Shown here piece after piece: positions 30,610 to 43,604 of a DNA stretch of 64,000 bases (the first letter of the stretch is position 1; every line of letters starts with the position of its first letter). The notes below the pieces were generated by a model. That model made no database searches. It was given only the letters and a program-made list of their open reading frames with translations, and had not been told where the DNA came from. Origin of the DNA: Selaginella moellendorffii (Eukaryota; Plantae; Lycopodiophyta); contig NW_003314275.1 in the NCBI RefSeq assembly GCF_000143415.4, forward strand, positions 563,955-627,954. The letters run 5' to 3'. A program made the translations under genes and the position numbers.

Positions 30610-30611
30610 TT

Positions 30612-30785
30612 GTGATGAGTGTTATCTGTCTTTCTTCCATGGCTGTAACACACAACTCAACACGTTAACACTGAGCCACATGAGATGAGTGTTATCTATC
30701 TTTCTTCCATGGCTATAACACACAACCCAACACTTTAACATTGAGCCACATGACTTAGCCTTGTGAAGATGCAACAGGTCAATAG
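30612..30785. repeat. ~70 bp tandem duplication partly copied from the neighbouring RPN3 3' UTR (filler DNA)
   Basis: Two copies of gatgagtgttatct...gagccacatga; the tail matches 30057-30120. Confidence 0.75.
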
Positions 30786-31818
30786 ATTTAAAGAGAATAA
30801 AATAGCACATTTTATCTTTCTCCTTTTAATCCAATTGGAAAAGGAGTAATTGTTTTAATTGAGAGAGCTTTTAATGGTTATTTTATTCCAATTTATCTCA
30901 TAAAGTTTCAAGGATTTGTAATGACAATATATCTAAATTTCATCTCATGATCACATTCACTATAATGGCCTATAAGAAGCTATTGCTACTGTGGCCAGAT
31001 TTCCTATGAAGCTAGAGATGTTGCAAGCATAGAAGTCTAGCATGGGGAAGAATGTGTTCTCTTTAGTGGCCATTTTCATTATAAAAGTTTTGAATAATAG
31101 TGGATTTCATTGTGGAAAGTCTTGTCAATATGAATTTCATGATAAAAGCCATAATATTTAACTCATTGTAATCCATTATATTACTACAATATATGTCAAT
31201 ACATTTATGATTAGAAGTTCAGAACTAACCAAACCTACCACTACCCCTGAGGCTAAATTTTTTTTGCATTCCCTGAGTTGCAAGCCAAGTGGGAATGGTT
31301 TCCAAGCTAAGTGGGAGTGATTTTGGAGTGAATAAATGTTCACTCCACTCTAATTCATTGCATATCCACTACAAGAACAATCTTTTTTACACTTCACTTT
31401 AATATATACTTTGACAACCACTGTAAACACCATTGCAACACACATGCATTCTGTACTTCAGCTTCATAAGCATGGGATGGCATCAATTATGCACTCTACT
31501 GCAAAACACTTCATGCCATGTATTTCTATGCCACATCAGCCATTAACATGACTTTTGTTTTTGATAGATTGAGATGGTGTTAGTGCCATGTTGTTTTTGA
31601 TGGAGATTGCCAAGTTATGTGGGTGAGCAAGATAAGAGGCGAGGCAAGGAAAAAGAGGCCATTCTTCTCGCATTTTCCAGTTAAGACGAAGATGGTTCCA
31701 ATCCACCTGACAAAATTCCCAAAGAATTTCATGAGTCAAAATCATCGTCTTTCTTTGATCCAGTCGTACACCTCCATTGCTGCTCGTGCTTGACACTCGG
31801 ATCCATCTCCTCAAACTC

Positions 31819-31980
31819 ATGGGAGACTATGCACCGCCCGACTCCACCCCTGCTACCAACGACGAGCACACCTTTACCAGCAAGCTTCCTCCTGCAACAG
31901 TCCTGGAGCTTACGATCCCTCAGTACGTTTTTCAAGGACTAGAGAGTTACCTGGACAGGGTAGCGATCGTGGACACAGAC
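31819..31980 (+). pseudogene. N-terminal fragment of a 4-coumarate:CoA-ligase-like acyl-activating enzyme
   Basis: MGDY...EHTFTSKLPPATVLELTIPQYVFQGLESYLDRVAIVDT resembles the 4CL-like N terminus; similarity stops at the palindromic insert. Confidence 0.6.
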
Positions 31981-38920: not shown

Positions 38921-39198
38921 TTATTTGTTTAAAAAATTTGGAACATGTGCTTGACATGTCTTGGAATTTACCCCGGTGGTGAAAGAAGAAGAAGAGTTTA
39001 AAGTCTCAGCAGCGCCCAGTGGGGCATGGGACTTGTTGCATGGCAACGACGACAAAGGCGTGCCTTTCGGACTCCTACTTCGCTGGAAGTGACGGGCTGT
39101 TATCCTTGTTGTGTTGGCGTGTCGGTCAGGAAAGCAAAGAAATTTCCCGGTGAGTGAATAAATAAACAGACAAGATAAGGGTTTCTTAATAGAATTCC

Positions 39199-40685
39199 AT
39201 GGCTATGGAGGAGCTTGCTTCTTACAAGGGACATATAGTAGCCTTCCCTTTGCCACTCCAAGGCCATATCAATCCCATGCTCATTCTCTGCAAGGCCCTA
39301 GTCTCACTGGGCTTCTCCGTGACATTCGTCAATGCAGAGAGCAACCACAAGCGCCTCCTTGCTCACATTTCTGCCGCTCCAAGCACAGGAATCGACTTTG
39401 TTCCCATTCCCGACCACCTTGACACGCCCATCGCCACTGTCGACGTCCACAACAGCAACAATCTGCTACTCGTCCGCAACACAGTCCGCAAGATGCGTGC
39501 TGACTTTGAAAGCGTGCTTAAGAACATTGTCAGCAATGTCAAGGTGAAGTTCATTCTCTCGGAAATGTCTGTAGGTTGGACACAGGAAACTGCGGATAAG
39601 TTCGGCATCCCCAAGGTGACACTTTTCACTGAGAGTGCAGCTTCACTTTCGATCCAATATCACATTCCAGAGCTCCTTGCCAAGAAACACGCTCCTGTCC
39701 GACAAGGCTGTCCAGGTATGATTTCAGCATCGTTGTTGCATCGGTGTTCGACCCTGAAACTTCTGTTTTATAAATTTTAGATCTGCAGAGTATCGACTAC
39801 TTGCCTGGATTCCCATTGATGACTACGGCTGACATTCCTTACTCGCTTAGTGCTCACGCCGAGAAGTTGGATCCGGGATTTGCACAAAGGGTCGAAAGGA
39901 AAAAAGTTTTGTTGAAGGCAAAGTGCGTTCTGGTCAACTCCTTTGACGCTCTCGAGCACGGAGTCTTCGCCGGTCTCCGAGCAAAATTCCATCAGACCGT
40001 GGTTCCAGTTGGTCCACTGCTGCCTCCCGCTTTCCTGGGAACCGAAAACGGGTCAAATAAGCCTACCACCTTGCCAGGTATGTGGCCTGCGGATGACACT
40101 TGCAAGCAGTGGCTGGACCGTCAGCAAGATGGCACAGTTTTATACGTTTCTTTTGGGAGCAACGCAACTCTCACAATGGATGACTTTGTTCGACTTGCAA
40201 GAGGGCTGGGGCTGTGCAAGCAGCTGTTTCTATGGGTTGTTCGGCCAACTTTAGTCCCGGGTTCATCCTTGGACGAGCTTTTGAAAGTGGTGAGGAGAAA
40301 TTCCATATACGAAGGACAGTCGTGCACTGTTTCTTGGGCACCACAGCTGCAAGTCCTGTTACATCCAGCTGTTGGCTGGTTTGTCACGCACTGTGGATGG
40401 AATTCGACGCTGGAGAGCATCTGTGCGGGTGTCCCCATGTTGTGTTGGCCTCTGACGGCAGAGCAGAATCTGAATTGCAAGTTCATTGCTGACGAGTGGA
40501 AGATTGGTGTCAGATTGCTGGACGACAGTCGCTGCATTGAAGAGGTGATAACGGGGGTTGTGGAAAGCCAAGGAGACAGCCAGATGAAAACCAAAGTTAA
40601 AAAGTTGAAAGAAGCGGCCATCAAGGAATCCAAACTGATCACGAAGACCATTGATGATGCTCTCAGCTCTAAATCACGTTCTTAA
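39199..40685 (+). CDS. Family-1 UDP-glycosyltransferase, 2 exons (intron 39716-39780)
   Basis: PLPLQGHINP with catalytic His; PSPG box WAPQLQVLLHPAVGWFVTHCGWNSTLESICAGVPMLCWPLTAEQ. Confidence 0.95.
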
Positions 40686-41749
40686 TAAGAACTTGGGCAG
40701 TTGATATCAAAGTGTTATGTAAACAGAAATTCAAAATCCATATTTGTGCGCTCACTGAAAAAGCCAAAGATGCCAGCTCTTGAAAGGGGAGCTTATTATC
40801 AAACAAAATGTCAGGAGCAAAAAATTGAATTGCAAGATAGATTAAGTGAATCTAATGAAGTTCAATTGATGTTTAATCAAACTGGTGGAACATGTACCAG
40901 CAGTAAGTCATTTGAAGGCTCTCTGTCATAAGCCTTCTCACAAAAATGTTGCCTTTGCTGGCTTTGTGAGTGTGCGCAGCACACTGGAGGAGCTGAGGAT
41001 CACAATGTGCTTATGGATATATATTTTTTCTATATATAGTTTATACATTTGTGTTCCAAGATGATTTTTTAAAATATAGTTATAAAACTGTGAACTGAAT
41101 ATAGTTTTCAATATGCATAAAATATGGTTCTGTGAAGAATGTTTGCAGTATAAGGGTTTTGGAAACTAATATGAACCTCAGATTAATCTAGGGATTTAAT
41201 TTGGGTATTAATCCCAAATATGGGTTTGGAATTCAAATTTCATTGTGAACCATAATGCTAAATATACTCTAATAAATATAAAGAATATAAAAAATACATA
41301 ATATCATCACAATGAGCACCAAGCAATAACTATAGAAGTGTTAGACCAAGCTTGAGGGGATAATATCAATATAAATTCACAATTAACTCAAATGTATGAG
41401 TAAGATGAGAAAATATGATTACTAGGAAGCATGTTATAATAAGCTTAACTTAGTTACTTTAGACTTTCCATTATTATAATTTACTATAGAAAATGCTTTT
41501 AATTCTTAGCCATTATAAAAGTAATTTTTACATTGGATTCAAGTCTCTACATGACCAAGAGTGACATTTACACTGAAAGCCACAATGTTTAACTTATGTT
41601 TGACTTGTTGTGGTACATGCAATAAGTTAGTTAATATTCAGGTCATTTTGCTATGTTTTTATTGCATTTCCAAAGTCACTTATTAATTGATCTTCTTCCA
41701 TCTATAAGTTTTCAACATGAGTTTATGAATTCTTAAGTCAGTCGATTAA

Positions 41750-43604
41750 ATAATAAAACTTGCAATATCAATACTTTAAATCAAGGATAATAACAACCTC
41801 ATATCTCTTTCCCCTATGCCAATTGAAAATGCTTAAAAGCCCTTTGATGAAATAGCTTTTAATGGCTATTTTTTCTCTATTTATCCCATAAGGTTCTAAA
41901 GATTCAAATCTTAATTTATTATTACATACACTACATTTACCCCTTGTTCAAGACGTCAATGTCCTTCATAAAACACCTCTATTTTCATCTATTCATTTAT
42001 ACTGTAGTTTTATGGTGGATCAATGTCTTCATTGATGAACCCCTATTAAGCTAAAGAGAATTAACACTTCCATTTCTACATTAAATCTATTAATTTTTCT
42101 ACTATATAATTAGTCCCATAATTCTCCCTTTAAACCAATTGAAAAATGCCCCTTAAGCCAACTAAAAAAGGCTTAAAGGCCCTTTGATGAAAAATCCCCT
42201 AAAGTTCTAAAAATCCACAGTATTTAAATTTCAATCGATAATTATATAGATCACTCACCCCTTTTTCAAGATGTTAATGGAACACTTTTATTTCTATCCA
42301 TCCATCTGTATTAAATTCTTCTCCTACAATATATCTTTCAATAAACAAAACCATACTGTAGTCTCATAATGGATTAATGAAACCTTTATTGAGCCAAAAG
42401 GGAACAAACACCTTTATTTACACATTAAATGGAACCCTTACTAAGACAATTGCAATCCTATAAAATCCTTACTAAACCAAGGGGAATAAATACTTCCATT
42501 TCCGTATAAAATTTACTAATCCTTCCATTATATAAACTAGTCCATACTATGCTAATGCACTAGTAAGGGTTCCATTGATCTATAATGGGATTACAATACA
42601 ACTTTGTTTATTAGACATCCATTATCAAAAAATCTACTATAAGACTAATTTACATAGTGGAAGGATTAGCATATTTAATGTGAAAATTAAGGTGTTAGTT
42701 TTCCTTGGCTTAATAAGGGTTCACTATAGGACTATGGTATGACTTTGTTTGTTAAATATTTGCTATCATAAAATCTATTATAGGACTAGTTTACATATTG
42801 CAATTCTATTGTAGATTAATAGAATCTTTATTATGCCAAAAGGAATTAACACCTCCATTTCCATATTAAATCTACTAATCTTTTCACTATATAAATTAAT
42901 CCCATAGTTAAATATTTTAATAATGAATATTTAACAAACAAAGCCATACTATAGTCTTATGGTGGATCAATAAAACCCTTATTGAGCCAAGAGGAACCAA
43001 CACTTCCATTTTTTTCATTAAATCTACTAGTCCTTACACTATGCAAACTAGTCTTATGGTAAATCGTACTATAGTCCCACAGTGGATTAATGACCTTTAC
43101 ATTAAATCTATTAATCCTTCCACTATGTAAACTAGTAATCTTCCACTATGTAAATTAGTCTTTAATGACCCTCTACATTAAATCTATTAATCTTTCCATT
43201 ATGTAAACTAATCTTTACTAAGCCAAGGGGAACCAACACTTTTATTTCTACATTAAGTCTACTAGTCCTTCCACTATATAAACTAATTCTATAGTGGATC
43301 TTTCGATAATGGATATTTAACAAACAAAAATATACAATATATTATTTTTATAATTATGGGGTAAAAATATACCTTATTCAAAGGTATATTATATTTTTTG
43401 ATAACTACTAATCAATGGGAATCAAACCCATGCCATAATACCTCTTGTATCTTTCTCCCTTTAAGTCAACTAAAAAAAAAGGCAATTGCTTAATAAGAGA
43501 GTCTTTAATAATTATTTTATCACAATGTTTCAAAAATCCATGGTAATAGTGTATCCATGATCATATACACTACACTTATTAAGTAGCTTATAATAGCTAA
43601 ATCA
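41750..43604. repeat. AT-rich degenerate repeat array with an internal inverted block (~42555-42800); probable DNA-transposon relic
   Basis: Recurrent ccaa(g)gggaa..acttccattt..attaaatctactaatccttccactat units on both strands. Confidence 0.7.

What the first reader, a model, noticed from the sequence alone, without database searches (positions are those of the whole stretch)
30610..43604. A 13-kb gene-carrying block has inserted into a duplicated PAC2 gene
Seen: the PAC2 remnant at 30345-30609 corresponds to 28626-28898 and the remnant from 43605 corresponds to 28907 onward. The two halves of one gene copy are therefore separated by 13 kb with only ~8 bp of target lost and no target-site duplication. 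The left junction has filler copied from nearby sequence, and related AT-rich repeats lie in direct orientation near both ends (30800-30975, 43440-43600). Both halves remain very similar to intact PAC2, while the cargo genes look old. Inference: a pre-assembled module moved here recently by break repair or transposon-assisted capture.
Basis: partly seen in the sequence, partly recalled or inferred. Interest (0 to 1): 0.8.

Follow-up and report, generated by a model that had tools for sequence, protein, structure and literature searches.

The report
Gene block inserted into duplicated PAC2
In the spikemoss Selaginella moellendorffii, a 13-kb piece of chromosome carrying three old enzyme genes sits inside a young spare copy of the proteasome-chaperone gene PAC2 on both chromosome copies, with break-repair rather than transposon features at its edges, so it is a clean but ordinary-in-kind example of genes moving as a block.

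Summary
The window is S. moellendorffii scaffold GL377579.1. A 1.72-kb unit (PAC2, a tRNA-like repeat, the last ~300 bp of RPN3) is tandemly duplicated. The RPN3-side copy is split in a coding exon at 30609/43605 by 12,995 bp. Six to seven bp of target are lost and there is no target-site duplication.

The block carries two citrate-synthase-like genes and a UGT85-type glycosyltransferase. It is not an assembly error: the other haplotype (GL377602.1) has the same block and the same right junction, with no gaps.

Site patterns across the four PAC2 copies give a near-star tree (9 shared versus 117 private changes). The duplication, and therefore the insertion, came only about 15% earlier than the haplotype split.

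The cargo genes have no relative closer than 42-51% protein identity, apart from their alleles. An old, already assembled module therefore moved in, and no donor copy remains among annotated proteins.

I found no inverted ends, LTRs, Helitron ends or transposon proteins. The AT-rich end repeats belong to a dispersed family. End-joining capture of a chromosome fragment fits best.

"Recent" is relative: the block is on both haplotypes. No outgroup genome or donor site could be searched. The scan had noted the same three-gene cluster on another piece, which I take to be the other haplotype fetched here.

The parts
28624..30343 (-). Tandem-duplication unit, copy A: intact PAC2 (CDS about 28735-29910, minus strand), tRNA-like intergenic repeat (30016-30174) and a dead RPN3 3' fragment (30201-30343)
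   Evidence: Self-BLAST and repeats. Pfam PAC2 on the exons. RefSeq 301-aa PAC2 model ends at window 29910. Alleles are 99.1% identical with dN = 0 in the tested exon.
30201..30343 (-). RPN3 3'-end fragment carried along by the duplication. It has a 147-bp internal deletion flanked by a 7-bp microhomology and heavy CpG-to-TpG decay.
   Evidence: Matches 44782-44884 and 45031-45080. 8 and 21 private changes in about 150 bp in the two haplotypes.
30344..30609 (-). Left remnant of the split PAC2 copy A' (3' UTR, last exon, last intron, end of the penultimate exon). The duplication junction lies at 30343/30344 with a 3-bp microhomology (TGC).
   Evidence: 91.9% identical to 28624-28896. Junction sequences. 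An in-frame 9-bp gap relative to A.
30610..30797 (.). Junction filler: two 70-bp tandem units plus a 47-bp tail, partly copied from the tRNA-like repeat about 0.5 kb upstream. Absent from the other haplotype.
   Evidence: TRF period 70, 2.0 copies, 92%. 30721-30797 is 88% identical to 30057-30133 and 77% to 44642-44718. Missing in L001.
30798..30975 (+). Left-end copy of a dispersed AT-rich repeat family of about 150-190 bp
31540..32560 (-). ORF-bearing stretch of unknown identity. The other haplotype has a 214-aa gene model with no Pfam hit here.
   Evidence: No Pfam or PDB match for five ORFs.
32725..34661 (-). Citrate-synthase-like gene 1 (435 aa RefSeq model, with introns)
   Evidence: Gene table. 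Pfam Citrate_synt on the exons. Nearest non-allelic relative 51% identical.
36833..38920 (+). Citrate-synthase-like gene 2 (438 aa model, with introns), head-to-head with gene 1
   Evidence: No nucleotide similarity to gene 1 apart from one 33-bp match in non-genic DNA (34914-34946 vs 36676-36708).
39199..40685 (+). UGT85-type UDP-glycosyltransferase (SELMODRAFT_411023 / XP_002970201.2, 471-473 aa)
   Evidence: Nearest non-allelic relatives 42-44% identical.
40690..43604 (.). AT-rich, repeat-dense tail of the block (GC about 33%). It holds further copies of the end repeat at 41789-41904 and 43437-43593, plus nested direct and inverted repeats.
   Evidence: No protein-domain hits.
43605..44504 (-). 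Right remnant of the split PAC2 copy A' (start codon to the break). It is now a pseudogene with haplotype-specific deletions of 2, 36, 8, 42 and 16 bp between the break and the start codon, and a further 7-bp one just upstream of the ATG. RefSeq annotates part of it as a 174-aa 'PAC2' gene.
   Evidence: 97% identical to 28907-29684. Deletions listed. Gene table.
44601..44759 (.). Copy A' of the tRNA-like intergenic repeat
44815..46810 (-). Intact RPN3 (502 aa model). The right boundary of the duplicated unit lies inside its last exon, at about 45080.
   Evidence: Pfam PCI and Rpn3_C. Gene table.

Best explanation
This is a real structural rearrangement in Selaginella moellendorffii, present on both assembled haplotypes. 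First, a 1.72-kb tandem duplication was formed with a 3-bp microhomology at its junction. It copied PAC2, the intergenic tRNA-like repeat and the last ~300 bp of RPN3. Within a short time (about 15% of the age of the haplotype split), a double-strand break in the penultimate exon of the RPN3-side PAC2 copy was repaired by end joining that captured a 12.8-kb chromosomal fragment. That fragment already contained two old citrate-synthase-like genes, a UGT85-type glycosyltransferase and AT-rich repeats. The repair removed 6-7 bp, made no target duplication and probably added ~190 bp of filler templated from the nearby repeat. Because the disrupted copy was redundant, the insertion was tolerated and spread. 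The fragment was moved rather than copied, or its donor copy was later lost. Shown: the anatomy, its presence in both haplotypes, the relative timing, and the absence of transposon hallmarks and of close paralogues. Inferred: the repair pathway, single-piece transfer, and the order of duplication and insertion.
For: Anatomy and junctions. Second haplotype: GL377602.1 has a collinear block and the identical right junction. Flanks are 98% identical, block genes 94-96%, and there are no Ns. Timing: across the duplicated unit there are 9 sites shared by both A' copies against A, versus 117 private changes, so T1/T2 is about 0.15. The RPN3 fragment has the RPN3 gene, not PAC2, as its homologous partner, yet it gives the same young age (3 shared versus 29 private; Fisher p = 0.32 against the PAC2 body). 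That argues for true youth rather than homogenisation by gene conversion. The deletions that disable A' differ between the haplotypes. Allelic dS of 0.03-0.07 matches the heterozygosity Ks of about 0.056 quoted in PMC7801247. Cargo age: the UGT's nearest non-allelic relative is 42-44% identical, the CS-like gene's is 51%, and the two CS-like genes share no nucleotide similarity apart from one 33-bp match in non-genic DNA. No transposon hallmarks: the inverted-end test falls within shuffles, no domains were found in non-genic ORFs, and intron-bearing genes lie on both strands. Filler: 88% identical to a repeat 0.5 kb away.
Against: No donor locus or empty site was found or could be searched at the DNA level. 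The paralogue test covers annotated proteins only. No outgroup Selaginella genome was available. The left junction differs between haplotypes and the filler exists in one only, so it may be secondary. Two copies of one AT-rich repeat family lie in direct orientation close to both ends, which could hint at a repeat-related mechanism. Gene conversion that reset the whole unit just before the haplotype split cannot be strictly excluded; it would free the insertion to be older and stepwise. Substitution rates vary about five-fold between segments because of CpG decay, so the clock is rough.
Confidence: 0.6

Rival explanations
1. The duplication and insertion are old, and the block may have grown in place by several insertions. 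The PAC2 remnants only look young because gene conversion from the intact copy kept refreshing them until about the time the haplotypes split.
For: The PAC2 body shows 1 shared versus 34 private A' changes, which conversion would also produce. The intergenic part is 80-85% identical between copies. The block's AT-rich repeats are old, at 65-73% identity.
Against: The RPN3 fragment is two short homology patches of 100 and 50 bp, 14.7 kb from its only possible donor, yet it gives the same young age. The low identity of the intergenic and RPN3 parts comes from private, largely CpG-type changes, not shared ones. The structural differences (147-bp deletion, 8-bp indel) were not erased. Three separate segments would each have needed resetting at the same time.
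Confidence: 0.17
2. A single replication-based event (fork stalling and template switching, or microhomology-mediated break-induced replication) produced the duplication, the filler and a copied 13-kb segment in one step.
For: Duplication and insertion are nearly simultaneous (T1/T2 about 0.15). There is microhomology at the duplication junction and at the 147-bp deletion. The filler looks templated.
Against: A copying mechanism should leave the donor intact. No second copy of the UGT or the CS-like gene exists among S. moellendorffii proteins above 44-51% identity. No microhomology could be assessed at the block junctions without the donor.
Confidence: 0.12
3. The block was mobilised by transposable elements. 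Candidates are a macrotransposon bounded by two direct copies of the AT-rich element, a Helitron, a Pack-type element or an LTR-bounded unit.
For: Related AT-rich repeats lie in direct orientation within about 200 bp of both ends.
Against: There is a 6-7 bp loss instead of a target-site duplication. There are no inverted termini. The end repeats are only 65-73% alike, although any repeats created at insertion should differ by about as much as the other dead DNA here. The family has copies inside and outside the block, and its conserved end lies about 25 bp short of the junction. No transposase or reverse-transcriptase domains were found. Intron-bearing genes on both strands exclude an RNA intermediate. 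The ends do not read TC...CTRR and the target is not A|T.
Confidence: 0.07
4. It is an assembly mis-join or a collapsed repeat.
For: The assembly is an older draft scaffold assembly, and repeats flank the junctions.
Against: Two separately assembled haplotype scaffolds, 2-5% diverged, show the same order and the same right junction with no N runs.
Confidence: 0.02

Closest known systems
Gene movement by double-strand-break repair with captured or filler DNA in plants (Wicker, Buchmann and Keller 2010, Genome Res 20:1229, as summarised in PMC3445842; the original was not held in the library)
   Same: A gene-carrying genomic fragment of kilobases sits at a non-ancestral site without transposon termini or a target-site duplication, with a small target loss and filler at a junction.
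   Different: The grass cases are mostly copy-and-paste, with the donor still present, and are often linked to transposon insertion sites. Here no donor copy is detectable. Three intact intron-bearing genes came together, and the target is a freshly made tandem duplicate of an essential-type gene, in a lycophyte.
Insertional translocation or segmental relocation next to a microhomology-mediated tandem duplication
   Same: The tandem duplication junction has a 3-bp microhomology, and there is a second breakpoint inside one copy.
   Different: The two events are unusually close in time (about 15% of the haplotype age). Their order cannot be read from the structure.
Transposon-mediated gene capture (Pack-MULE, Helitron, macrotransposition by paired elements)
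   Same: Foreign genes are carried into a new site, and related repeats lie near both ends.
   Different: The defining termini, target-site duplication and coding capacity were tested and are absent. The cargo is whole genes with introns on both strands, not fragments.
Plant metabolic gene clusters
   Same: Neighbouring non-homologous enzyme genes (CS-like pair plus UGT) of lineage-specific, fast-evolving type.
   Different: There are only two enzyme classes. Co-expression and product are unknown. Allelic dN/dS of about 0.5-0.7 suggests weak constraint.

Membership tests
Break-repair (end-joining) capture of a chromosomal fragment | No target-site duplication; small deletion at the target | tested here: met
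   6-7 bp (28900-28906) are missing and the flanks share no repeat.
Break-repair (end-joining) capture of a chromosomal fragment | Filler DNA templated from nearby sequence at a junction | tested here: inconclusive
   30721-30797 is 88% identical to 30057-30133. However, the filler is absent from the other haplotype, and its first ~35 bp per unit has no significant source.
Break-repair (end-joining) capture of a chromosomal fragment | Donor locus identifiable (retained copy, or a deletion scar) | tested here: not met
   No paralogue above 44% (UGT) or 51% (CS-like) among annotated proteins. A genome-wide DNA search was not possible with these tools.
TIR DNA transposon / Pack-type element / macrotransposon | Terminal inverted repeats and a target-site duplication | tested here: not met
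   The local alignment of the ends in inverted orientation scores within shuffles (119 and 261 of 300 reach it). There is no duplication.
LTR retrotransposon / LARD | Near-identical direct terminal repeats at the exact ends, a 4-6 bp duplication and an RNA intermediate | tested here: not met
   The end repeats are 65-73% identical and not terminal. Intron-bearing genes lie on both strands.
Helitron | 5' TC, 3' CTRR after a GC-rich hairpin, insertion between A and T | tested here: not met
   The ends read TTGTG... and ...AAATCA, and the target is GCT|GGT within coding sequence. Tested by inspection only.
Microhomology-mediated tandem duplication | Head-to-tail copies with a short microhomology at the novel junction | tested here: met
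   Unit 28624-30343 is followed by 30344 onward. TGC is shared by the RPN3 and PAC2-flank parents at the junction, and the junction is present in both haplotypes.
Allelic haplotype pair (not paralogous duplicate regions) | Collinear scaffolds at the heterozygosity level of divergence | tested here: met
   Flanks are 97.8-98.0% identical over 8.4 kb. dS is 0.03-0.07, against Ks of about 0.056 for heterozygosity and 0.12 for the proposed duplication peak (PMC7801247).
Plant biosynthetic gene cluster | Three or more non-homologous pathway enzymes, co-regulated, one product | not tested
   Only gene identities were checked. Expression and chemistry are outside these tools.

The most novel reading that the evidence does not exclude
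The insertion first hit the only PAC2 gene, giving a harmful allele that could persist only when heterozygous. It was soon rescued by an unequal, microhomology-joined exchange with the wild-type homologue. That exchange placed an intact PAC2 beside the broken one and let a pre-assembled three-gene metabolic module, relocated as one piece without any transposon, spread to both haplotypes. This would be a dated snapshot of a plant gene cluster moving as a unit, plus a compensating duplication.
Probability: 0.2. Interest if true: 0.65.

Novelty: new member of a known kind. Interest (0 to 1): 0.45.

Why it matters
How neighbouring metabolic genes come to sit together, and how they change place in plant genomes, is mostly inferred from synteny loss, and base-pair breakpoints are seldom available (my own knowledge, not checked here). 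Here both junctions, the target sequence and a relative date can all be read. An old three-gene module landed in one piece in a spare copy of a housekeeping gene that had been made only shortly before. That gives a testable case for transposon-free relocation of a gene block in a lycophyte. It also gives a natural measure of how fast dead DNA decays there: small microhomology deletions, and very fast CpG loss in the GC-rich RPN3 fragment. In addition, the RefSeq 'PAC2' models of 174 and 204 aa are gene fragments, not genes.

Tried and rejected
(1) My first reading was that gene conversion kept the remnants similar while the duplication was old. It rested on 19 apparently shared differences in the RPN3 fragment. 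These turned out to be a MAFFT misalignment across the 147-bp deletion. After realignment there are 3 shared versus 29 private changes, so I downgraded conversion to a rival.

(2) I considered that the start of each filler unit copies the PAC2 sequence just right of the break. The match is only an 8-mer and is not significant (695 of 1000 shuffles reach the score).

(3) Inverted termini are absent.

(4) Transposon proteins in the non-genic parts: none found.

(5) The 'acyl-CoA ligase remnant' noted elsewhere in the scan for 31.8-32.5 kb: no Pfam or PDB support in five ORFs.

(6) tRNA genes and Rfam families: none in the window.

(7) GenBank EFJ protein models could not be located on contigs. 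The RefSeq XP members of the same clusters worked.

(8) Codon GC3 does not set the cargo apart from its neighbours.

Exons were searched by reference, and full-length proteins were taken only from database ids.

(10) The Wicker 2010 paper is not held in the library.

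
Full report
IDENTITY AND OBSERVATION

The UGT open reading frame at 39774-40682 is 100% identical to SELMODRAFT_411023 of Selaginella moellendorffii. The RefSeq protein of the same cluster maps to GL377579.1:593153-614639, and that locus equals window 29199-50685 base for base. The window is therefore GL377579.1:563955-627954.

Window 28624-28896 matches 30344-30607 (91.9%), and 28907-29684 matches 43605-44380 (97.0%). 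Homology continues, with gaps, to 30346 and 45080.

Pfam identifies PAC2 on the minus-strand exons at 29113-29961. It identifies RPN3 (PCI, Rpn3_C) at 44818-45348, an asparaginase upstream, citrate synthase on four ORFs inside the block, and UDPGT at 39774-40682.

Reading the minus strand, the break lies in coding sequence of the penultimate PAC2 exon, 46-53 bp upstream of its GT donor. The left remnant ends at 30609 (= 28899, allowing one CpG-to-TpG change). The right remnant begins at 43605 (= 28907); in the other haplotype homology begins one base earlier. So 6-7 bp are lost and nothing is duplicated. The only N run in the window is at 1204-2025.

The two PAC2 copies are one tandem duplication. 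Unit A (28624-30343) holds PAC2, a ~160-bp intergenic repeat and a fragment of the RPN3 last exon. The repeat carries a tRNA-type B-box motif on the minus strand. The RPN3 fragment at 30201-30343 matches 44782-44884 and 45031-45080. It has a 147-bp internal deletion between two copies of a 7-bp motif.

Unit A' starts at 30344 and ends inside the real RPN3 at about 45080. The novel junction shares TGC between its two parents.

SECOND HAPLOTYPE

The 90%-identical UGT (XP_002978365.2) lies on GL377602.1. I fetched 34.8 kb of that scaffold in two overlapping loci and merged them.

- The scaffold is collinear with the window from 16.4 to 51.1 kb.
- Flanks are 97.8-98.0% identical, block genes 94-96%, and AT-rich parts 82-88%. 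There are no Ns.
- It has the same gene order: PAC2, RPN3 fragment, PAC2 3' remnant, unknown ORF, CS-like, CS-like, UGT, PAC2 5' remnant, RPN3, NIF.
- The duplication junction and the right block junction are the same to the base.
- The left junction is remodelled. The remnant stops at the equivalent of 30469. The filler and 138 bp of the remnant are missing, and about 200 bp of extra AT-rich repeat is present.
- Only the window's state leaves the two PAC2 breakpoints 6-7 bp apart, so the window's state is ancestral and the other haplotype has a secondary deletion.

Allelic dS of 0.03-0.07 fits the heterozygosity level (Ks about 0.056). It does not fit the Ks 0.12 peak that PMC7801247 attributes to a polyploidy. 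That paper also states that the assembly holds two ~106-Mb haplotypes.

This rules out a mis-join. It also shows that there is no empty allele in this individual.

TIMING

I aligned the four copies (A and A' in each haplotype) and classified the variable sites.

| Segment | Sites shared by both A' copies against both A copies | Private sites |
|---|---|---|
| PAC2 body and 5' CDS (28907-29940) | 1 | 19 and 15 in the two A' copies; 0 and 6 in the A copies |
| Intergenic part | 5 | 46 |
| RPN3 fragment, after correcting a misalignment over the 147-bp deletion | 3 | 31 |
| Left remnant | 0 | not tallied |

In total there are 9 internal-branch changes against 117 terminal ones. The duplication therefore predates the haplotype split by about 0.15 of the split's age.

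The low raw identity of the intergenic part (80-85%) and of the RPN3 fragment (about 78%) is almost all private change. Much of it is CpG-to-TpG or CpA change in GC-rich, probably methylated, dead DNA.

The RPN3 fragment has the RPN3 gene 14.7 kb away, not PAC2, as its homologous partner, and it offers only 100-bp and 50-bp patches of homology. Yet its shared-to-private ratio does not differ from that of the PAC2 body (Fisher p = 0.32). I therefore prefer a truly young duplication to concerted evolution.

The deletions that disable A' between the break and the start codon are 2, 36, 8, 42 and 16 bp in the window copy, with a further 7-bp one just upstream of the ATG. In the other haplotype they are 11, 9, 113, 3 and 8 bp, with different boundaries, often between short direct repeats. 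So A' carried no lesion other than the split itself when the haplotypes diverged.

The insertion lies between the duplication and the split, so all three events are close in time. [quoted passage not shown] This figure is rough.

CARGO AGE AND DONOR

Apart from its allele, the UGT's best relatives are 42-44% identical Selaginella UGTs.

An exhaustive profile-free search with a CS-like exon found one cluster at E below 1e-30, which is the allele. Everything else was at 60% identity or less over short stretches. A full-length search with that protein gives plant peroxisomal citrate synthases at 51% identity or less.

The two CS-like genes share no nucleotide similarity apart from one 33-bp match in non-genic DNA. 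The block's own AT-rich repeat copies are only 65-73% alike.

Allelic dN in the cargo is 0.004-0.044. Reaching about 50% protein divergence therefore needs tens of times the age of the haplotype split.

The genes and their adjacency are thus far older than the insertion. The simplest reading is that one pre-assembled fragment arrived in one piece. No second copy exists among annotated proteins, so the fragment was moved, or its donor was lost. An unannotated donor remnant cannot be excluded.

MECHANISM

- There are no inverted termini. Alignment scores of the ends in inverted orientation fall within shuffles.
- There is no target duplication.
- The ends do not look like Helitron ends.
- No transposase or reverse-transcriptase domains occur in 20 non-genic ORFs.
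- Intron-bearing genes lie on both strands, so an RNA intermediate is excluded.
- The direct AT-rich repeats near both ends are significant as a match (0 of 300 shuffles). However, they belong to a dispersed family with a third direct copy inside the block and an inverted copy at 54 kb. The family's conserved 3' end lies about 25 bp inside the right junction.
- The filler is two 70-bp units plus a tail. Its tail is closest to the repeat next to copy A (88-90%), against 77-81% for the copy next to A'.

A small deletion, no duplication and a likely templated filler are the classic marks of end-joining repair that captures a DNA fragment. Gene movement of this kind is described for grasses (Wicker et al. 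2010, as cited in PMC3445842).

The structure does not fix the order of events. An insertion into a single-copy PAC2 followed by unequal exchange with a wild-type homologue would give the same map. I list this as the most novel reading that the evidence allows.

LIMITS

No other Selaginella genome, no whole-genome DNA search and no population data were reachable.

I did not build joined spliced proteins. Exons were searched by reference, and full-length proteins were taken from database ids.

VERDICT

This is a well-resolved new example of a known kind of event. The scan had already noted the CS-CS-UGT trio on another piece of this genome, which I take to be the second haplotype fetched here. 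The insertion itself had not been noted.

Noticed in passing
window 30016-30174 and 44601-44759: A ~160-bp intergenic repeat between PAC2 and RPN3 carries a tRNA-type B-box (GGTTCGATGCC) and a near A-box on the minus strand. It is probably a tRNA-derived SINE relic. ARAGORN and Rfam call nothing there.
   Followed up: partly
window 30201-30343 versus 44782-45080: The dead RPN3 fragment has collected 8 (this haplotype) and 21 (other haplotype) private changes in ~150 bp since the haplotypes split. They are mostly CpG to TpG or CpA. The neighbouring PAC2 pseudogene body changed by 1-2.4% over the same time, so decay is about five-fold faster in GC-rich silenced DNA.
   Followed up: partly
window 43520-44220 and L001 13944-14858: RefSeq annotates the right PAC2 remnant as protein-coding 'PAC2' genes of 174 and 204 aa. 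They are truncated, frameshifted fragments.
   Followed up: partly
window 1-608 and 3218-3826: A direct repeat pair, 98.7% identical over 610 bp and 3.2 kb apart, with an N gap between the copies. More diverged copies lie at 4646-5626. This looks like a young LTR-type element in the AT-rich left part of the window.
   Followed up: no
window 34792-35119: A 105-bp tandem repeat (2.7 copies, 89% identical) just upstream of CS-like gene 1. A 33-bp piece of it recurs at 36676-36708, upstream of CS-like gene 2.
   Followed up: no
window 41431-41606 versus L001 11950-12133: A ~180-bp segment is inverted between the two haplotypes inside the block's AT-rich tail.
   Followed up: no
window 39803-39837 versus L001 ~10612: The other haplotype's UGT allele lacks about 35 bp at the junction of the two UGT reading frames and has a 13-bp gap within the C-terminal ORF alignment. 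Its annotated proteins are shorter (459, 389 and 272 aa), so that allele may be impaired.
   Followed up: no
window 31540-32560: The stretch called an acyl-CoA ligase remnant elsewhere in the scan gave no Pfam or PDB match for five ORFs. The other haplotype has a 214-aa model here with no domain.
   Followed up: partly
window 32725-40685: The cargo genes have low CpG observed/expected ratios (0.2-0.7), against 0.9-1.2 for PAC2, RPN3 and the asparaginase. Their allelic dN/dS is about 0.5-0.7, against 0-0.15 for the neighbours. This suggests long-term methylation and weak constraint.
   Followed up: partly
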